Program-made: the position numbers and the translations under genes | Assembly (NCBI GenBank): GCA_964057225.1 | Contig: OZ059899.1 | Span: 11,532,001 to 11,596,000, forward strand | From: Auanema rhodensis | Lineage: Eukaryota > Animalia > Nematoda | DNA length: 64,000 nt | Direction of reading: 5' to 3' | Notes under the pieces: model-generated | What the model was told of the DNA's origin: nothing | The model's database searches: none | Seen by the model: only the letters and a program-made list of their open reading frames with translations | Shown here: one piece after another, positions 4,029 to 14,166 of the stretch | How positions within the stretch are numbered: the first letter of the stretch is position 1 | Layout: every line of letters begins with the position of its first letter

Positions 4029-6325
4029 TTCACTGAATTACAAATCATGTAGACAAAAAAAAACGACACATAATATAAACACGCGATGAAAAACGAAACA
4101 AGAATCATCGAGTAAAATTGTTACTCATTAATCTATGATTTTAAAAACAGAACTAAGATCTAGGTAAAAGAAACAACTATTCGTCGATACTTTTACTCGT
4201 AAGTTCTAGATTGAAAACAACGAAGGACATGTAGTGGAGAAGACATGATCATAAGCAAAACATGAGAAGATACGAATTAAACGATTTCTGAAGAAGAAAA
4301 AGAAAAGGGAGAAATTGAACGCACTATCTGATGAAAGACGTCACTGTGACTTTCAAAAGTTGTACACGACATTAAAATCGTGCAGATTGTGGTCTTAATA
4401 AAGATATGTGATAAAAGAAGAATAAGAGCTGTACATGTCGATAGTCATGTTCAATTGAGACAAGTTTTAATGCCTTATACGGATGAAAAAAAGTTTTTGC
4501 AAGAAACAAAAAATTTGTTGAAATGATTTTTGAGTAAGAATTTGAAAATGAAATTAAAGATTATCGGTCATTTATATAAGATGTGGCGCAAAACACACAC
4601 TGTAAAGTTATAATAAACTGACTAAAAATAGTAAAATTTGAAAATGAAACGTCATTTTACTCTAAATTTATTAGTTATTAAGTGGAATATTGGTCAACAT
4701 AGTACTTATTATGTTACATAGATCAAAGTGACGAGGTATGAAGTAAACGTGTATTGATTCTTTGGATTAAGATATTGTTTATAAATATCCAAAGTTTCAA
4801 AACAGGATGGAAAAGAAGCTAACAATTTTTGATTTGATTTGATTTGAACTTGAAGATAAAAATGAACATAAGCATGAATACCAGTTATATCCAAATTTCA
4901 GGAATATATTAGTAGAGTAAAAGTAGCACGGGGGATGTGAGAAAACGAAAACAACTGATAGCGGCAGTCGTTTCCAAACACAATGTGGTAATCTTTCGAA
5001 CCAAGTATTTGCTTCATACCTTTGAAAATTTTCATGTTTTTTTCTCAAGAAAAGTGAGGAATAAAAACAGGATAGCCTATCTACTGGTCCAACATGTTCA
5101 CACGTTGTAACAAAATTCACCAGAAGGCATGCACGACAGTTGTAACGACAGTGGCTAAAATAGAACAGCTGGGAAGGACAAGCATGCTTATTTCACGTGA
5201 ACATAAAGTGCTTTCTTAATTACTTACTCTAGAACGACTAAGACCAACGATAAGAAAAAAGGGCAAATGCGCAAGTATTGATTACAGCGTATTGAGGTTA
5301 AACGAATAGACATCGTAAGATTACTGAAAAGGTAGATTTTTCGAAGATAAAGTCTGTTTCTCGATCAATAGCTTTTGCAGAAAAAAGACAGAGTTTTATC
5401 AGCACATAGGCAACATGTCAATTTCGTGAATTTCACGTGAATGGCGCCTGCATAGCAGCATACATCATTGTCAAACCAATATATGATCCCAGTGATTGCT
5501 TTCCATCGCAAACGAATTTCTAGAGAGATTTCCCACCCATAACCACTATCGTTATCTTCTGTATTATAGAGAAATTATAGATATATAATCAAAAATCTGC
5601 AATATTTATTTCCTACGCATATAAAAATCTATTGTGAGTTACTATGTACATCAGACTCATCCTTATTTGAAGACAAGAATGGGAACCATAAGTTTTTACC
5701 TGAAAGTTCTGATTAAAACAAGTTTTTCAATCAGAAATCAAACCATATTTCTGTCGCTCACGTACTAAAACTGTTTTTTCCTCTCTGTATGTGTTGAATT
5801 GTTCTTCTGTCATAGTAAGATAGAGATAGACCTAATGGAAGGAAAATAAGGAAATATAAGTTGACATGATTTTTACAGAATGTAATACAGGTCCAACCAT
5901 AGCTGACGAACATAAAACAAAAACTGCCCAAAGGTGAGCATGGGGATAACGTAATAAAAATCGTCTATAATAGAATTATTTGTTTTTCATGTGTTCATTT
6001 CTTTATAATCTCACCTGACAAAAGCCGGTGGAAAACGTTTACTTTGCTGATAATAGGTTGCTCGTGTTCTTGTTGCATTCAATAACATTCGTGTTGTATG
6101 TAAAAATGCCATATCTTAAACATAACGAGATAGATAATACAAATAAACAAAAGAAATAGTACGCATAGGCCTTTAGCGATGTAACCCAAAAGAATCTAAT
6201 GATCATATCTATCTTCTTTATATAGAATTGTAACAAAATTTAACAGTAAATTGAACAAAAATAACAATTGAAGCCAACAAAATCCTAAAGTTATCACGTC
6301 ATCTTCAACAGGTTCTCACGAACGT

Positions 6326-9300
6326 TCATACTCTAAGATACACCCAAACGGCATCAATTCCTTCTCCAATTTGAGTAACTTCTTTATAATACTGATTTTC
6401 CGGTAAGGGGAAGCGACATGCAAGTAAATTTGAACCAGATTTCATTTCAGAAAGCTTTGGTACGAGATCTTGCATCTGAATGTTATAATTGAATATTTAT
6501 TAAGTAATTTACTGTCTCCAACCAAGCTTTCAGCTCCAAAAATAACGGCAGTATTATATTGAGTTAAATCGGTTTTAAATATATCCTTTCTAAAAAATTA
6601 GTTTGGAACTCCATCCAAAAATATCATCAAGATCTAACCTATGAAACTTGGCCTTTTTCCTCAATCCTTGCTTTGTGGCTACATACTTTGAATAAGCCAC
6701 GAGAATTGAATTTAGCTCTACTCCTGTGCTTTCAAAACCCTCGTTCGCACATTGTAAAACCTGGAAAGTTTTTAGTAATATTCGGTTCCCTTTGATATTT
6801 TTCAGCAAGTTGGAATACAGTTGACCAGCCAAGACCGAATAGGCAGATTATACAAATGACCCGGATCAAATTCACCGAAAAGATAATAACTAGGCAAAAC
6901 CCCATACAAATTGCGAAAAAACGTGTCGTCGAACTTTGCTTCATATAATACTTTGAACAAAAAAAATACAGCTAATTAAAGTCATGGAAGAGTTTAGACT
7001 AGAATTTTCTACAGAGGAATGAGCAAATACAATTTATATATGATTTTGAGAAAGAGAATAACTGAATTTGATGTTGGAATGAGAAACCATGAGATGAACA
7101 ACAACTATTGCACACATATACACATGGAAGTGAAATTGATAAACAGCTCTGAACTCGAATGCAAAACGAATAAAACATTTTTCGAATAAAATTTTAGTCC
7201 TACTTAGGAAATTACTTAATATGGAAATCTAATAAAAACATAATCTATACTGGCTATTGAGGCGTCTCGACAAGTGTGACTGTTGCATTATATGGTTGGC
7301 TTGAAGCTACCAGACGATTGAATCTCGTCTTCCTCAGCAGTTGCCTTGTCGACTTCTGTGTCTTTTTCTGCTTCTTCTGTCTTTCCGCCAGATCAAGTCC
7401 TCGATGCGTCACTCCATCCGCTAAATCCATTTTTGCTTGTAGCGAATCTAGATCTCCTTTCCTAATTGGTTTGACGGAGATATCTCGAACGGCACGGAAC
7501 TGACCGCAATTATTGACATGCTCATTTTCCAAGCGGAAATAGTTCCAAACGAATCGACGAAATACTTCGGCAGGGGCAGTGACGGTTGTTAAGAAGTCCG
7601 AATCAAGAGTCCAAGCTTCTCCAAGTGAAACGTTGAGAACCCATGCAAGACGAAGAACAAAGTCTTGAACGATCGCAGCATAATAGTACCATTTACTACC
7701 GTAGATCATTTCTTCTCGTAAAAATGGTGCGTCTTTAGGAGCACGAGGATCAATAAGACCCCAGTCCATGAAAATATCCCAAAGGAATGTGTAAGTGAAT
7801 GAAAATATGTAACTAGCAATCCATATGTAGAAAAATGGTGATGTTACGTTAGGGTTATTCTTCTCAGCCCATTTGTTAAGTGCTCCACAAATGACGACAA
7901 TGTAAGTAGTTGAGTATTTTCCAGCGTTAACCAAATGCGGATGAACTCGTTTGGTATCACGATAACGACGCAGACATTGCATGAAACGAACAGTGGCAGG
8001 TATTATTGAGACAAAGGACCGAACGCCTGACACAGACATACACATATCCTTTCCTGTACTCATATCCACTCGGCCCCACGGCACAGATCCAGTAGTTGAA
8101 TTGATTACTCGGACGGCTAAGAAGTTGTCCGTGTCGTAGTTAACTTCTGTTGAGTAGAAGCACAAGAAGTACTGCAGATCAAGAAATGCTGTGGATAACG
8201 AATTCATTTGATCTCCAAGCCAGAAATCGGTGAAGGTGACGAAGTGCAAGGGTGCAGTAAAACAATTATAGCAGTGCTTTATCAGCCAGAAGCGTGAGCT
8301 GCCGTGGAATATCGACGTTGGCTTACTGAAGGGATTGAACAGAATCAGGAAGCAAAGTATCATCAGTACGAGTGGTGGTAAAAATGGTGGTATATGAAGT
8401 AGATGTGCATATAAGTAGGCTAATACAGCTACGGACCATAGCATTATCATGAAGCTGGCAATTTGCATAAGCGTCTGATACGTTAAATGATTCCTAGGAT
8501 CAACTTCGAAAATGAGTACGTGATTGACTCCGGCTCCGGCCCATCCGGCCATATTCACTCCGCACAGAAAGATTGACAGAAAAAGAAGGAATGGTCCTCG
8601 GAAAAGACGAACGGCGACCCATTTTGGTTCATTTTCTCGTGGTGCAGATCCAAGCCATGAAAAGAAAATGCCAACTAGTAGAATTATGCTAGCACCCATG
8701 AACAATCCTAGAGAGAAAGTTGTAATGGGCTTTTGCTTTTCAGAAAGCGGTGGAACCTTCAACCTTTTCATTCCAGCTTGACGATTTCCTCCTTCCAAAT
8801 CATTAATTACAGAAGTTTCGACATTAGTTATAAGTGTTTCAATTTCGCGATTTAGAAAGAAAGAGCTTTTCTCCACTTTAGTAATTCTCCAATCCAATCC
8901 TCGTTCATTTCCTGTTAGCTTGTCATGTTTCTTCAAAATCTTACGGAAACCTGTGGCATTCAACTGTTGATAGTTCTGAACCAGAACTAACGATAGGTAG
9001 AATTCCGAAAAAGCTAATTTGAGTTGTTGATCAGTCTTGCTCGTTTCTTTCCCCAATTTATCTTGACCACCAAATCGGCGTCGAAGTCGGTTGGTTGGTT
9101 CCTGCCTTTTTTCCAAAACTTCCTTGAATGTATGAAGCTCAGATTGAAGTTCATGATATTTTCCTTGAGCTTCAGCGATCTTTTGTGAGAAAAACAAGTT
9201 GATTTTGGTCAGCTCATTATCACAAGTGATGAAAAATTTCTCGTCCATCTGAGAAATATGCTCTTCGCGGCGATCTTCTTCTGTAGGAATTTGCATCATG

Positions 9301-9640
9301 TTGTCGTATAAAAGATTTTTCATTGCTTCATAGTCAATATATTGCTTCCGCCATTCCGGTGTTAAATGGCTGGCCAACTGCTCTCCAAACTTCATCTGAA
9401 AAATCAAATTTCAAATAAACTCACAACACGCCCGTCTCCAGATCCCAGATCAATAAGCGGACCTTTAGTTTTGGTCTGCACTATGGCTTGCTTGACATTA
9501 GCCAACTGATTTGGGGTCGCAGGAACATAAGGAATGCAAACACGACGTAGGGCTGGCGTAACAAATGGAATTGCGGCCATGGAAATGCCAAGAGCCGTGG
9601 CGCCTGCTACACCGGCGATAAGCATTCCGCTCATGCCCAT
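6326..9640 (-). CDS. ATPSCKMT: FAM173-family mitochondrial lysine methyltransferase (ATPSCKMT/ANTKMT-like); exons 9640-9425, 6760-6639, 6589-6523, 6475-6326
   Basis: N-terminal TM plus PALRRVCIPYVPAT and motif I LIDLGSGDGRV in exon 1; continues in phase 0 as VLQCANEGFESTGVELNSILVAYSK..DIFKTDL..VIFGAESLM..LLACRFPLP..GEGIDAVWVY*; all GT-AG. Confidence 0.93.
7254..9395 (-). CDS. XPR1: XPR1/SYG1 SPX-EXS phosphate exporter, single coding exon (713 aa from MKFG), nested in intron 1 of the methyltransferase
   Basis: MKFGEQLASHLTPEWRKQYIDYEAMK SPX start, LNATGFRKILKKHDK, DFWLGDQMNS, EVFRRFVWNYFRLENEHVNNCGQFRAVRDI; TTTTCAG directly before the ATG at 9395. Confidence 0.97.
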   Translation of the reverse strand: MKFGEQLASHLTPEWRKQYIDYEAMKNLLYDNMMQIPTEEDRREEHISQMDEKFFITCDNELTKINLFFSQKIAEAQGKYHELQSELHTFKEVLEKRQEPTNRLRRRFGGQDKLGKETSKTDQQLKLAFSEFYLSLVLVQNYQQLNATGFRKILKKHDKLTGNERGLDWRITKVEKSSFFLNREIETLITNVETSVINDLEGGNRQAGMKRLKVPPLSEKQKPITTFSLGLFMGASIILLVGIFFSWLGSAPRENEPKWVAVRLFRGPFLLFLSIFLCGVNMAGWAGAGVNHVLIFEVDPRNHLTYQTLMQIASFMIMLWSVAVLAYLYAHLLHIPPFLPPLVLMILCFLILFNPFSKPTSIFHGSSRFWLIKHCYNCFTAPLHFVTFTDFWLGDQMNSLSTAFLDLQYFLCFYSTEVNYDTDNFLAVRVINSTTGSVPWGRVDMSTGKDMCMSVSGVRSFVSIIPATVRFMQCLRRYRDTKRVHPHLVNAGKYSTTYIVVICGALNKWAEKNNPNVTSPFFYIWIASYIFSFTYTFLWDIFMDWGLIDPRAPKDAPFLREEMIYGSKWYYYAAIVQDFVLRLAWVLNVSLGEAWTLDSDFLTTVTAPAEVFRRFVWNYFRLENEHVNNCGQFRAVRDISVKPIRKGDLDSLQAKMDLADGVTHRGLDLAERQKKQKKTQKSTRQLLRKTRFNRLVASSQPYNATVTLVETPQ

Positions 9641-9756
9641 GCTGAAACACCACGGCTCATAGGCATTTAAAAGAAAAAAACAAAAAGAAAAAGCTAATAA
9701 AAAGTAAATAAGCTATACGACTACGGACACACAACTCAAAGACAATTTTGACTCAC

Positions 9757-9852
9757 CTTGATAGTTTATACTCAGGAATCAAAACGAAGAAGGAGAAATT
9801 ATACGAATTAATAAAACTTGATGATTTCAATTCATAAAAGTTTGATCTAACA
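9757..9852 (-). other. Putative non-coding leader exon shared by the methyltransferase and XPR1
   Basis: Bounded on the minus strand by TTTTCAG (9859-9853) and AAG|GTGAGT (donor 9756-9751); contains only a Met-Asn-stop uORF. Confidence 0.6.
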
Positions 9853-10125
9853 CTGAAAATAAAAAAAATTTACAAAGTTTTCAATACTAAATGTAAAAGT
9901 AGCAAAACCGAAATGCAACCGAATCATTCAAAAAACTCGTAAAGATCATGTTATAAGCAAGGTTCACGGACACTAGTAATATGTCAACAATATTTGATAC
10001 TGACCCGAATCACGTGCTCACTTTTTGCTATCTAGAGAAGCTAATTTAACATTTCAACTTTTATTTAGAAAAACAGAACTTTTTTTTATTAATGTTATGC
10101 AAGTTGAAATATTCATTTCCAGAAA

Positions 10126-10812
10126 ATGTTGGCAAAATACGTAGCTAGAGCAGTTGCTTCATCTAGCAGAACTTCTCTTAGATTATTGTCTTCTAGTAAT
10201 GTTATTAGATCTGCAGGTAGTACTATTTTTTATGAGAATATGGAGCTTCATATATCTCATTTTAGCTTCTCCTGTTGCTGATGGTGCTCCAGCCCCAACT
10301 CCATCTGATGATAGACAAGTGTCCGCCAAAGTTTCAAGCTTAGTAGAAGAAATTGCAAACTTGAGTCTTCTTGATGTTTGTTCTGCTAATCTTTTCTATT
10401 CATGAAATGTCATTCAGGTATCTGATCTTAATTGGGCTCTCAAGAAACGTCTTAATATTCCTGATCAGCCTATGATGGCTCCAGGAATGATGATGGCAGC
10501 TGCTCCTGCTGCCGCTCCCGCTGAGGCTGCCGCTGATGACGTTCCACAGAAACTTACCTTCACAGTTAAATTGACTAAGTTCGATGATACCAAAAAAATT
10601 GCTCTTATCAAAGAGATCCGATCAGCTATTCCAGGGCTTAACCTTGTTCAGGCTAAAAAGGTATGAGCAAATCGATCTAGTTTATAGCTATAAAAATGTT
10701 TCAGTTTGTGGAAACTGCACCAGTTGTTGTTAAGGAAGATATGGGTAAAGGAGAGGCTGATGAATTAAAGGCATTGTTAGAAAAAGCTGGAGCAACCATC
10801 GAAATTGTTTAA
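10126..10812 (+). CDS. mrpl-12: Mitochondrial ribosomal protein L12 (bL12m)
   Basis: LVEEIANLSLLDVSDLNWALKKRLNI, FTVKLTKFDDTKKIALIKEIR..GLNLVQAKKFVE, LEKAGATIEIV*. Confidence 0.95.
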
Positions 10813-11158: not shown

Positions 11159-12479
11159 ATGACTATGCTTTTGAAGTTATATGACGACGTTGTATTAGTA
11201 TTCCTATATAATTTTGTTTTTATATATTTTATTATAAAAACATTTGTTTTTATTCCGGTAAGCTTATTATGTTTTAAAGATAGATTAATTTGGTTATCTT
11301 TAAATTTTTCTAGAACCTCGTAGCTATTCAAGAGGATCCTTATGTGTCAGGTGATTTCTTCAGATCTTTAGCAAGCATAGTTGTATATGATAACAAGCAA
11401 GCTCGGAAACTACAGACAGTAATTTATTTTTTAAATCCAATTAGGAGCTCCGATTTCACTATTTTCACATATCGTCTCTTTTCAGACTTATGAAATACAA
11501 AATGGCTCCATAATCTTCATTCAACCTTCATTGCTTTGGGCTATGGAAGCATTTCAAAAACGTAACAAGCATTCATATATACTTCTTACACATGACGATG
11601 ATCTTTCTGTGCCATCGTCTTACACTAATATTTTAAAGTATTAAGCAACTAAAAAACAATAATGTTAGAAGTCAAAATTCAGTGATAAATACCTAATAAG
11701 ATGGTTCGGTCAAAATATCGATATGTATCATCCAAAGTTAGAAGGGATTCCCATTGGAATAGCAAATCATCATTGGGTTCATGGAAATCAAAGGCGTTTG
11801 ATAAATATACAAAAACATAAAATGTAATATACTTGAAATAGTAAACTGAAAAGCGGTTATTTTATTCTTTAGGAATTTCACAGAACGTTTTCATGGATTG
11901 TTTGTAGGATACATGGCAGCCACAGACACCAAGAGAATGCCACTGAAAAACCATTTTTGTTCGGAATCGAATGACTGGACCTTTTGCGTGTACGTCGTTA
12001 AAGTTCAGCAGTATCAATTCGAAAGCTTTCCAGGGAAAGACGTACCTCTGTACAAGAATACCTGATCAAGATAGCTACTGTGCAATTTGTTTTGTCGCCT
12101 AGAGGGAATGGCTTAGATTGTCACAGAACGTATGTTGATCACATAAATTTTATTCTATCCTTTAAACTGTTTTGCAATAATTCTGATTTCAGTTGGGAAT
12201 CTATTGCAATGGGAGCAATTCCAGTTGTTGAGAGTAGTACCTTAGATCCAATGCTAGAAACAGAAAATGTGCTTATCATCAACTCCTTTTTGAATGTTAG
12301 CTTTTTTTCGTTTTTAGAAAATTGCGTATGATGACAACTGAAAAAATTTGCTTTAGATGACCAAAAAAACTCTGATGGATGCAGCAAAAGACTTTCAAGA
12401 TAAGCCACGGCCTAATCGAAAGCTGTATAGAAACTACTGGCGAAGAAGAATTAGAAGTTTTCAAATTGTAACTGGATAA
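11159..12479 (+). CDS. Exostosin/GT47-like glycosyltransferase with N-terminal signal anchor, about 8 exons
   Basis: Spliced product MTMLLKLYDDVVLVFLYNFVFIYFII..DPYVSGDFFRSLA..YILLTHDDDLSVP..RWFGQNIDMYHPKLEGIPIGIAN..FVLSPRGNGLDCHRTWESIAMGAIPVV..KLYRNYWRRRI. Confidence 0.85.
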
Positions 12480-12666: not shown

Positions 12667-14166
12667 ATGGACGTCCCCATTATTATTCACAATAGGATTA
12701 ACCATAGTAGAATACAAACACATGTCGAAATAAAAGAAGACGATACTGTAATTAACAAAGTTGAAACTCGTTTTATTAAAAAATTTAACATAGATTGGAA
12801 CTGTGGAACAGCGTTTATCCGATAAGATTAAAATACCTCATGATCAATTGAATATTTTGCTTTGTGGAAAAGTACTAGAGCAAAATACGTCAATTAAAGA
12901 CTTGTTGCTCGGCCCTACTACGCAAGTTTACTGAATCTGGATAATTAGCACATTTTAAAACGTTTAGTTGTCTTGTCGCACTTGCTATAGAACAGAAAAA
13001 GGATTCAACTTTGAAAAGTGAATCGTTGGTTCGTTCTACACCTGCTATAGGATCTTTCTATGTATGGTGCAAGACTTGTTCTGATATACAAAGAGGAAAA
13101 CTTCGTGTATTTTGTCTTTCCTGCAATTCTACAGCTGTAGTTGTTGAATCCGATCCTACTGGATGGGACGATGTTCTAAAGAGGTAAAATAAATTTTTAT
13201 AAGCCAATTTAAAACAATGCTTGTTTTAGTAAGCGTATTCGAGTATACTGTGAAGAATGTGACGAGCAAAGATATGCTTCTTTCAAATTTAAATGTGTTT
13301 CATGTAGTGAAGTTGACTTATATTATCGTAACAAATCTTATAAGTAGGTTTGCAGACTTGTGCTCCATTAAGCCAAATTCGTGGAAATTGGGACAAGTCT
13401 GAATGTTGCATATGCTTAGACGATAGTCAGCTTTTTGTCTTTGATTTCGGATGCAATCACTCGATTTGTCGATCCTGTTTCTTAGAGTATTCTACTTCTT
13501 GTCTTAAAGAATCTAAATTCTTATTTCAACATCCTTTTGGTTACACTTTATCCTGCCCTAGCCTTAATTGTAATCGTTAGTATCATATTCCTCAACAAAT
13601 TCGAAAAATGTGAACTTCAGAATGCCTGAGAGATGTTCATCATTTACGCATTATGGGGTCGGAAAAGTACAAACAATACCAGTGTATCGCTACAGAAAAA
13701 TTAATTGCTTTGGATGAGCAAGGTAGCTTAAATACATTTATGGCGAAATATAGAGTATATTTCTAGGATTTTTTTGTCCATATCCTAACTGTGGTTACTC
13801 GTTTATTTGGGAAAACAGTGAGGGGCGTATGATATCTTGCCCCGAATGTCTGAAACAATTTTGCAGGTTTGATGATGGCTAATATCATTACTGATTAAAA
13901 TATTTAAAGGATTTGTATAGAAATAGAATGTATTTGCTTTTCTGAAGATACAACCAAAGAAACAATAGCAGCTACCACCAAGTCGGTTCTTTCTTAATAA
14001 TAATGACTCTTGAATTTGTTCCAGGAAATGTCCCGGCTGCGACAGTAACACTGAGCGCAGTGGAGGATGTGCTCACATGCAATGTACATCTTGTAAGCTA
14101 CACTGGTGTTACAGATGTGTGAAACCTTGGACAGAAGAATGTCAATTTGATCACTGGTTTGATTGA
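12667..14166 (+). CDS. pdr-1: Parkin RBR E3 ubiquitin ligase
   Basis: Ubl domain, RING0 GSFYVWCKTCSDIQRGKLRVFC, RING1 CCICLDD..GCNHSICRSC, RING2 KCPGCDSNTERSGGCAHMQC..WCYRCVKPWTEECQFDHWFD*. Confidence 0.95.

What the first reader, a model, noticed from the sequence alone, without database searches (positions are those of the whole stretch)
6326..9860. XPR1 nested on the same strand in the intron of a mitochondrial methyltransferase, with a shared leader exon: a candidate two-gene splicing switch
Seen: the methyltransferase is split right after its SAM-binding motif I (DLGSGDGRV|VLQCA) by a 2664-nt intron (9424-6761) containing the whole XPR1 ORF in the same orientation. Both ATGs sit directly behind TTTCAG acceptors (9642 and 9396), and one upstream donor AAG|GTGAGT (9756) closes a non-coding exon. 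Inference: one pre-mRNA yields either leader->methyltransferase (XPR1 excised) or leader->XPR1 with intronic polyadenylation. Known: this resembles the unc-17/cha-1 (VAChT/ChAT) locus; FAM173 enzymes methylate ATP synthase subunit c or ANT, and XPR1 exports phosphate. A reciprocal coupling of phosphate export to mitochondrial ATP-synthesis tuning is a hypothesis. From memory the C. elegans orthologues carry adjacent names (Y39A1A.21/.22), which would suggest conservation; unverified.
Basis: partly seen in the sequence, partly recalled or inferred. Interest (0 to 1): 0.88.

Follow-up and report, generated by a model that had tools for sequence, protein, structure and literature searches.

The report
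XPR1 nested in methyltransferase, shared leader
In this nematode the phosphate exporter gene XPR1 sits inside an intron of the gene for a mitochondrial ATP-synthase methyltransferase. RNA from two other nematodes shows that one shared non-coding first exon is spliced to XPR1, so this is probably a second example of the "two genes, one leader" layout known from the worm cholinergic locus.

Summary
On the minus strand a 184-aa ATPSc-KMT/FAM173-type methyltransferase (exons M1 to M4) is split after DLGSGDGRV by a 2664-nt intron. That intron holds an intact, intronless 713-aa XPR1 gene (SPX+EXS). XPR1 starts 29 nt after the M1 donor. A 96-nt candidate leader exon lies upstream, with a TTTTCAG acceptor and an AAG|GTGAGT donor.

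The layout is old. It is present in C. elegans (XPR1 = Y39A1A.22), Pristionchus, Cooperia, Meloidogyne and Dirofilaria, and probably in a nematode outside Rhabditida. Trichinella has no methyltransferase within 10 kb of XPR1.

RNA-derived public contigs support the leader model. In C. elegans, five contigs join an equivalent leader exon directly to the XPR1 ATG and skip M1. In M. hapla, three contigs do the same.

A new point is that some XPR1 RNAs are spliced on from their 3'UTR into M2.

Two things remain open:
- The leader-to-M1 junction was not observed.
- There is no RNA from the window species.

The metabolic coupling idea is untested. The locus is best filed as a new, unpublished member of the cha-1/unc-17 and unc-60 kind.

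The parts
9757..9852 (-). Candidate shared non-coding leader exon (96 nt). It is preceded by a ttttcag acceptor (AG at 9854-9853) and closed by the donor AAG|GTGAGT (GT at 9756-9755). It contains a 2-codon uORF, ATGAATTGA, at 9835-9827.
   Evidence: Sequence. The donor octamer is rare in the window (3 per 128 kb). Positionally equivalent leader exons are spliced to XPR1 in C. elegans (L004 5519-5585) and M. hapla (L002, ending at 7422) RNA contigs. The 3' part shows weak sequence similarity to the candidate in relative L017.
9425..9641 (-). Methyltransferase exon M1. The ATG is at 9640 and the exon codes for 72 aa: an N-terminal hydrophobic anchor and SAM motif I, DLGSGDGRV. The acceptor is tttcag|C and the donor is GTT|GTGAGT.
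   Evidence: M1 is 53-81% identical to M1 of the relatives whose loci were mapped by tblastn. The orthologous products carry Pfam PF27912 ATPSCKMT_N.
9396..9424 (-). 29-nt spacer between the M1 donor and the XPR1 acceptor (gtgagt...tttcag). It contains an in-frame TGA at 9406-9404.
   Evidence: The spacer is also 29 nt in C. elegans, 31 nt in L013, 38 nt in Cooperia and 40 nt in M. hapla. C. elegans introns under about 40 nt are not excised (PMC4165533).
7254..9395 (-). XPR1 (SLC53A1) orthologue. It is an intronless 713-aa ORF with the stop TAG at 7256-7254.
   Evidence: Pfam EXS 8e-103 and SPX 3e-27. Full-length homology to nematode and animal XPR1. It is sister to Strongylida in the tree.
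6761..7253 (-). XPR1 3' flank, which is also the rest of the host intron. It has no AATAAA, only TATAAA at 7038 and TATGAA at 6945. It holds only weak donor candidates, for example TAA|GTAATT at 7215.
   Evidence: In C. elegans and M. hapla weak donors in this interval are spliced to M2 in some RNAs.
6639..6760 (-). Methyltransferase exon M2 (VLQCANEGF...), with the acceptor ctttccag.
   Evidence: The intron position is conserved in all mapped relatives.
6523..6589 (-). Methyltransferase exon M3.
6326..6475 (-). Methyltransferase exon M4, with the stop TGA at 6328-6326.
10126..10812 (+). Divergently transcribed mitochondrial ribosomal protein L7/L12 (mrpl-12) gene. Its ATG lies 273 nt from the leader acceptor.
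   Evidence: Pfam Ribosomal_L12 on two exons. The neighbour and its orientation are the same in C. elegans L004 and in L017.
5662..6112 (-). Orthologue of C. elegans Y39A1A.20 (function unknown). Its ATG is 214 nt downstream of the methyltransferase stop.
   Evidence: tblastn with P0128, E=4e-25. The order is the same in C. elegans, with a 233-nt spacing.

Best explanation
This is a compound locus that is conserved in nematodes: one transcription unit that makes two unrelated proteins.

Transcription starts next to the divergent mrpl-12 gene and yields a non-coding leader exon (9852-9757). The leader's strong donor can take one of two paths:
- (a) It joins the first acceptor (9642). The mRNA is then leader-M1-M2-M3-M4, encoding the ATP synthase subunit-c lysine methyltransferase (ATPSc-KMT/FAM173B orthologue). 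All of XPR1 is removed as part of the 2664-nt M1-M2 intron.
- (b) It skips M1 and joins the acceptor at 9396, directly in front of the XPR1 ATG. The result is an XPR1 mRNA.

M1 and XPR1 cannot be joined to each other. Only 29 nt separate the M1 donor from the XPR1 acceptor, which is below the roughly 40-nt minimum for nematode introns. The two coding units therefore behave as sterically enforced, mutually exclusive cassettes.

The XPR1 mRNA has two possible 3' ends. It either ends inside the host intron, or it is spliced from a weak 3'UTR donor to M2-M4, which then serve as 3'UTR.

Shown: the gene anatomy in the window, its conservation, and the leader-to-XPR1 and XPR1-3'UTR-to-M2 junctions in C. 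elegans and M. hapla RNA.

Inferred: that the window species uses the same junctions, that the leader also feeds M1, and that the choice is regulated.
For: Window anatomy and splice signals.

Orthologous C. elegans locus L004. It has the same order (mrpl-12 divergent, leader, M1, 29-nt gap, XPR1, M2-4, Y39A1A.20), and the reference annotation has the 190-aa methyltransferase CDS spanning XPR1.

C. elegans RNA. Eight intron-less RNA contigs were recovered. L005, L008, L009, L010 and L011 join ...GAATAAAG (leader, L004 5519-5585, donor AAG|GTGGGT) directly to ATGAAGTTC of XPR1. L005 was seen in 5 samples, and L008 has 6 further similar places. No contig shows SL1, and none has the 29-nt spacer removed.

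M. hapla RNA. L003, L021 and L022 join a leader exon ending at L002 7422 (GAG|GTATTT, 230 nt upstream of the methyltransferase ATG) to an acceptor 40 nt after the M1 donor.

3'UTR-to-M2 junctions: C. elegans L011 and M. hapla L003.

Nesting elsewhere. Nesting is annotated or mapped in Pristionchus, M. hapla, Cooperia, Dirofilaria and L017. In the short contig L013 the M1 end and the start of M2 flank XPR1 directly. It is also implied by M1+XPR1(+M2-4) fusion predictions in more than 20 species.

Background. The minimal intron is about 40 nt, and shorter spacers enforce mutual exclusion in C. elegans (PMC4165533). The C. elegans ATPSc-KMT orthologue is an active enzyme, so the split ORF is joined in vivo (PMC9006661).
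Against: There is no RNA from the window species.

The leader-to-M1 junction was not seen in any species. I could not reference the C. elegans methyltransferase protein to fetch its mRNA contigs.

M1 could instead be SL1 trans-spliced from transcripts that start downstream of the leader.

De Bruijn contigs can hide minor isoforms such as SL-spliced XPR1. Contigs L006, L007 and L026 run unspliced from M1 into XPR1.

The short spacer is not universal: it is 144 nt in L017, about 200 nt in Pristionchus and 3.3 kb in Dirofilaria. Steric exclusion therefore cannot be the whole mechanism everywhere.

The window has no strong donor in the XPR1 3' flank and no canonical AATAAA there. Its XPR1 3' end is undefined.
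Confidence: 0.68

Rival explanations
1. Ordinary nested gene with trans-splicing. XPR1 is expressed from transcripts that start at the shared promoter or inside M1, and it is SL1/SL2 trans-spliced at the TTTCAG|ATG acceptor (9396). The upstream GTGAGT is not used for XPR1 in this species. Coupling to the methyltransferase is then only passive, through outron versus intron competition.
For: TTTCAG immediately before an ATG is the typical nematode trans-splice acceptor. Contigs L006, L007 and L026 show RNA running from M1 through the spacer into XPR1, as an outron-containing precursor would. M. hapla L023 starts exactly at the acceptor.
Against: None of 8 C. elegans contigs and none of 9 M. hapla contigs carries a spliced-leader sequence on XPR1. 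Eight of the 17 carry the cis leader. The window has the same leader-exon signals at the equivalent place. By established knowledge (cited from memory), an upstream donor in the same pre-mRNA normally converts a trans-splice acceptor into a cis acceptor in C. elegans.
Confidence: 0.2
2. Two independently transcribed genes that merely overlap. XPR1 has its own promoter within M1 and the spacer. The nesting is a frozen accident with no splicing choice, and the upstream exon belongs to the methyltransferase only.
For: In Dirofilaria and in L019 there are 3.3 kb and 1.1 kb between M1 and XPR1, which is room for a promoter. Nested genes are hard to separate once formed, so conservation alone does not prove function.
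Against: In the window only 29 nt separate M1 from XPR1. Leader-to-XPR1 junctions are observed in two distant species.
Confidence: 0.08
3. A fusion protein, M1 anchor + XPR1 (+ M2-4), as predicted in many public nematode annotations.
For: M1 ends in phase 0 and the XPR1 ATG follows its acceptor directly, so a joined product would be in frame. More than 20 database entries are such fusions.
Against: The 29-nt spacer is below the minimal intron size and carries an in-frame TGA, so read-through stops. XPR1 ends with its own stop codon. No RNA contig has the spacer removed. Where the spacer is 40 nt or longer, a joined frame hits a stop at or just after the XPR1 ATG (L017, Pristionchus, Dirofilaria) or within about 13 codons, before the ATG (M. 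hapla). These frames were read.
Confidence: 0.03

Closest known systems
C. elegans cholinergic locus cha-1/unc-17 (ChAT/VAChT)
   Same: [quoted passage not shown] One gene lies, on the same strand, inside the first intron of the other, so alternative splicing of one pre-mRNA gives two unrelated proteins (PMC3875643).
   Different: In the window locus the host has a coding exon (M1) between the leader and the nested gene. M1 and the nested gene lie 29 nt apart, so steric exclusion is possible. The nested mRNA can be spliced on into the host's downstream exons. The two products have no established common pathway.
C. elegans unc-60 (ADF/cofilin A and B)
   Same: One first exon is followed by two serial alternative gene bodies that are chosen in a switch-like way (PMC3875643 and PMC3469465).
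   Different: The unc-60 products are paralogues, and the shared exon carries the start codon. In the window locus the products are unrelated and the shared exon is non-coding.
Sterically enforced mutually exclusive exons in C. elegans (egl-15 5B/5A, let-2 9/10)
   Same: The intervening segment is shorter than the roughly 40-nt minimal intron (14 and 30 nt there, 29 nt here), so the two units cannot be joined (PMC4165533).
   Different: Those are homologous cassette exons of one protein. Here one 'cassette' is a complete 713-aa gene with its own start and stop.
C. elegans Y39A1A.22 and the neighbouring ATPSCKMT_N gene (reference annotation)
   Same: It is the direct orthologue of the window locus. 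The gene order, the 29-nt spacer and the leader architecture are the same.
   Different: C. elegans XPR1 has one intron and the window copy has none. The host intron is about 4 kb in C. elegans and 2.7 kb here.

Membership tests
Compound locus of the cha-1/unc-17 type | One gene lies wholly inside an intron of the other, on the same strand | tested here: met
   The XPR1 ORF 9395-7254 lies inside the methyltransferase intron 9424-6761. The same holds in at least 6 other nematodes.
Compound locus of the cha-1/unc-17 type | A common 5' non-coding exon is spliced to the nested gene | tested here: inconclusive
   The feature is met in the orthologous loci of C. elegans (5 RNA contigs) and M. hapla (3 RNA contigs). 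In the window only the sequence signals are present, and no RNA is available.
Compound locus of the cha-1/unc-17 type | The same exon is spliced to the host gene's next exon | not tested
   No RNA contig of the methyltransferase mRNA could be fetched. The junction is inferred from the conserved acceptor 1-9 nt before the M1 ATG in the window, C. elegans, M. hapla, Cooperia and L017.
Compound locus of the cha-1/unc-17 type | The two products act in one pathway | not testable with these tools
   One product exports phosphate and the other methylates ATP synthase subunit c. A link is conceivable but unsupported.
XPR1 / SLC53A1 phosphate exporter | An N-terminal SPX domain plus a C-terminal EXS membrane domain, with full-length similarity to animal XPR1 | tested here: met
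   EXS 8e-103 and SPX 3e-27. Identity to non-nematode animal XPR1 (fish, amphioxus, molluscs, insects) is 46-49%, mostly over 93-98% of the length.
ATPSc-KMT (FAM173B) mitochondrial lysine methyltransferase | An N-terminal hydrophobic anchor (Pfam ATPSCKMT_N) followed by a seven-beta-strand SAM fold with motif I DxGxGxG | tested here: met
   The window protein has DLGSGDGRV. M1 is 53-81% identical to the M1 exons of relatives whose products carry PF27912, and the Caenorhabditis M2-4 segments are about 75% identical to the window's. C. briggsae P0140 gives sub-threshold Methyltransf_31/25 hits. The local Pfam copy lacks PF27912, so the window protein itself was not scored.
ATPSc-KMT (FAM173B) mitochondrial lysine methyltransferase | Trimethylates Lys-43 of ATP synthase subunit c | not testable with these tools
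   This is reported for the C. elegans orthologue expressed in human knockout cells (review PMC9006661). It has not been tested for the window protein.
Sterically enforced mutually exclusive splicing | The segment between the upstream unit's donor and the downstream unit's acceptor is shorter than the minimal intron (about 40 nt) | tested here: met
   The spacer is 29 nt in the window and in C. elegans, 31 nt in L013 and 38 nt in Cooperia. The threshold comes from PMC4165533. The feature is not met in L017, Pristionchus or Dirofilaria.
Sterically enforced mutually exclusive splicing | No mRNA contains both units joined | tested here: inconclusive
   None of 17 RNA contigs from C. elegans and M. 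hapla has the spacer removed. Assembled contigs cannot exclude rare isoforms, and there is no RNA for the window species.
SL2-type operon | A downstream gene lies about 100-300 nt after the upstream gene's 3' end and is SL2 trans-spliced | not tested
   The Y39A1A.20 orthologue starts 214 nt after the methyltransferase stop. No RNA evidence was examined.

The most novel reading that the evidence does not exclude
Across chromadorean nematodes, one transcription unit uses a single leader donor to choose between the first coding exon of the ATP-synthase methyltransferase and a complete XPR1 gene. A sub-minimal 29-nt spacer forbids joining the two. XPR1 mRNAs either end in the intron or carry the methyltransferase exons as a 3'UTR that may be sensitive to nonsense-mediated decay. 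The ratio of the two mRNAs is actively set by phosphate or energy status, so that phosphate export and ATP-synthase maturation are reciprocally tuned.
Probability: 0.15. Interest if true: 0.8.

Novelty: new member of a known kind. Interest (0 to 1): 0.55.

Why it matters
It would be a further worked example of a rare gene architecture: two unrelated proteins made from one pre-mRNA by choice of acceptor. Only a few such loci are known (cha-1/unc-17, unc-60). This one has been conserved for a very long time across free-living and parasitic nematodes.

It offers a simple genetic system, available in C. elegans, to ask two questions. How does a leader donor choose between two acceptors 245 nt apart? 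Does a spacer under 40 nt enforce mutual exclusion between whole genes?

There is also a practical consequence. More than 20 public nematode annotations wrongly fuse XPR1 with methyltransferase exons, and these should be corrected.

Tried and rejected
- Exact look-ups of the window XPR1 and of C. briggsae P0006 found no contigs. The window species is not in the collections.
- The methyltransferase exons scanned singly against Pfam gave nothing.
- Two homology searches with M2-4 pieces did not return the C. elegans methyltransferase. Its mRNA contigs, and hence the leader-to-M1 junction, could not be fetched.
- Literature searches for Y39A1A.21/.22, XPR1+ATPSCKMT and xpr-1 found no description of the locus.
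- A search for complementary elements flanking XPR1 found only short pairs that look like chance matches (14-30 nt).
- A donor scan of the XPR1 3' flank in the window found only weak candidates. There is no canonical AATAAA either.
- The fusion-protein reading was rejected (see rival explanations).
Full report
**1. Observation**

Reading the minus strand and assembling the exons gives a 555-nt CDS. The exons are 9640-9425, 6760-6639, 6589-6523 and 6475-6326, and the product is 184 aa. It aligns from residue 1 to 183 with the split methyltransferase genes of Pristionchus fissidentatus and Meloidogyne hapla.

The first intron (9424-6761, 2664 nt) follows ...DLGSGDGRV. It contains one uninterrupted ORF, 9395-7254, of 713 aa. 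That ORF hits Pfam EXS at E=8e-103 and SPX at E=3e-27, and it shows full-length similarity to animal XPR1.

Both ATGs sit behind tttcag acceptors. Upstream there is a ttttcag acceptor (AG at 9854-9853) and, 96 nt later, the donor AAG|GTGAGT (9756). The octamer AGGTRAGT occurs only three times in both strands of the 64-kb window, so its presence in the 485-nt intergenic stretch is unlikely to be chance (about 0.01).

**2. Context and organism**

Upstream and divergent lies a mitochondrial L7/L12 (mrpl-12) gene, on the plus strand from 10126. An orthologue of C. elegans Y39A1A.20 starts 214 nt downstream of the methyltransferase stop.

The same order is found on C. elegans chromosome III (L004): mrpl-12 (divergent), a methyltransferase CDS with ATPSCKMT_N spanning XPR1, then Y39A1A.20. 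The C. elegans XPR1 is Y39A1A.22.

The window species is not in the databases. On an XPR1 tree it is a clade V rhabditid, sister to Strongylida with support 80/93.

**3. Conservation of the nesting**

Separate, nested gene models exist for Pristionchus (L001), M. hapla (L002) and C. elegans.

tblastn maps M1 upstream of XPR1 and M2-4 downstream of it in Cooperia (L016), Dirofilaria (L014) and an unnamed relative (L017). In the short contig L013 the end of M1 and the start of M2 flank XPR1 directly. In L019, a nematode that branches outside Rhabditida in the tree, M1 lies 1.1 kb upstream of XPR1 and the contig ends before M2. Trichinella papuae has no methyltransferase exon within 10 kb of XPR1.

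More than 20 public protein predictions from clades III, IV and V fuse M1, always ending in GDGRV, to MKFGEQ... of XPR1. Others fuse XPR1 to M2-4. These are independent traces of the same layout and are very probably annotation artefacts.

**4. RNA evidence from orthologous loci**

*C. elegans.* The XPR1 protein is carried by eight short public assembly contigs that lack the 595-nt XPR1 intron, so they derive from RNA.
- Five of them (L005, L008, L009, L010, L011) join the sequence ...GAATAAAG directly to ATGAAGTTC of XPR1. That sequence is L004 5519-5585, an exon preceded by ttttcag and followed by AAG|GTGGGT, about 150 nt upstream of the methyltransferase ATG. M1 is skipped.
- L005 was found in 5 samples, and L008 has 6 further similar places.
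- Two contigs (L006, L007) run unspliced from M1 through the spacer into XPR1.
- No contig shows a spliced leader, and none has the spacer removed.

*M. hapla.* The RNA contigs have nine or more XPR1 introns removed.
- Three contigs (L003, L021, L022) join a leader exon ending at L002 7422 (GAG|GTATTT) to an acceptor 40 nt after the M1 donor and about 80 nt before the XPR1 ATG.
- One contig (L026) is unspliced from M1.

The window has the equivalent exon at the equivalent place.

**5. The 3' end**

C. elegans L011 joins a donor 9 nt past the XPR1 stop (GGGAG|GTTTAG) to the first base of M2. M. hapla L003 joins a donor 392 nt past the stop (GCTT|GTAATA) to M2 and continues through the spliced methyltransferase exons. 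Some XPR1 RNAs therefore share the host's 3' exons.

Most other contigs end within the host intron. Three M. hapla contigs end at the same base, 188 nt after the stop. This fits 3'-end formation there, but no poly(A) tail is visible.

In the window the 493-nt flank has no AATAAA (only TATAAA at 7038) and only weak donors. Its 3' end cannot be called.

**6. The spacer**

The M1 donor and the XPR1 acceptor are separated by:
- 29 nt in the window
- 29 nt in C. elegans
- 31 nt in L013
- 38 nt in Cooperia
- 40 nt in M. hapla
- 144 nt in L017
- about 200 nt in Pristionchus
- 3.3 kb in Dirofilaria

In C. elegans introns under about 40 nt are not excised, and such spacers enforce mutually exclusive exons (PMC4165533). 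In the window an in-frame TGA in the spacer also blocks read-through.

In the four loci with spacers of 29-38 nt the ATG directly follows the acceptor, so a joined product would be in frame but cannot be spliced. Where the spacer is 40 nt or longer, a joined frame would hit a stop at or just after the ATG, or within about 13 codons in M. hapla. This is my reading of the sequences. It rests on few, related species and is only suggestive.

**7. Identity of the products**

Non-vertebrate animals have a single FAM173 enzyme. The C. elegans orthologue methylates Lys-43 of human ATP synthase subunit c (review PMC9006661). The split ORF is therefore joined and functional in vivo. XPR1 is the animal SPX-EXS phosphate exporter.

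**8. Interpretation**

The best reading is a single transcription unit of the form leader-(M1 or XPR1)-M2-M3-M4. It resembles cha-1/unc-17 and unc-60 (PMC3875643), with steric exclusion added in the short-spacer species.

Three things are not shown: leader-to-M1 splicing, use of these junctions in the window species, and any regulation or physiological coupling. Trans-splicing of XPR1 may coexist with the leader route.

No paper in the searchable library describes the locus. The nested models are, however, in the C. elegans reference annotation. I therefore rate it a new member of a known kind, of moderate interest.

Noticed in passing
window 5662-6112 (-): An orthologue of C. elegans Y39A1A.20 (113 aa, no Pfam family) starts 214 nt after the methyltransferase stop on the same strand. 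The spacing is 233 nt in C. elegans. Such spacing is typical of a downstream operon gene, so the compound locus may head an operon.
   Followed up: partly
window 10126-10812 (+): The mitochondrial ribosomal protein L7/L12 gene is divergent from the leader exon, 273 nt away. The arrangement is conserved in C. elegans and L017. It may be a bidirectional promoter for two mitochondrial-function genes plus XPR1.
   Followed up: partly
window 9827-9835 (-); L004 5540-5584: The leader exons contain upstream ORFs. The window has ATGAATTGA. C. elegans has a 14-codon uORF that ends 2 nt before the leader donor. The L017 candidate leader has two short uORFs. A shared uORF would act on both mRNAs.
   Followed up: no
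L009 1-3 versus L004 5516-5518: The longest C. elegans leader contig starts AAG where the genome has CAG, just before the leader exon. This could be the last bases of an SL2-type leader or of a further exon, or simply an end-of-contig error. It remains unresolved.
   Followed up: no
P0001-P0004, P0007, P0013, P0028, P0033, P0039, P0040, P0044, P0045, P0126-P0133 and others: Many public nematode 'XPR1' proteins of 780-970 aa are chimeric predictions. They contain methyltransferase exon 1 and/or exons 2-4, and sometimes the Y39A1A.20 orthologue as well.
   Followed up: yes
L014 2405-5183 and 12210-13391: In Dirofilaria immitis the annotation splits the methyltransferase into two separate genes on either side of XPR1. 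tblastn shows M1 at 4464-4685 and M2-4 at 12737-13385, so the gene is nested there too, with a 3.3-kb M1-XPR1 distance.
   Followed up: yes
window 11159-12479: Another first-stage note (s1-393745) flags a GT47/exostosin-like gene here as a possible horizontal transfer. I did not examine it.
   Followed up: no
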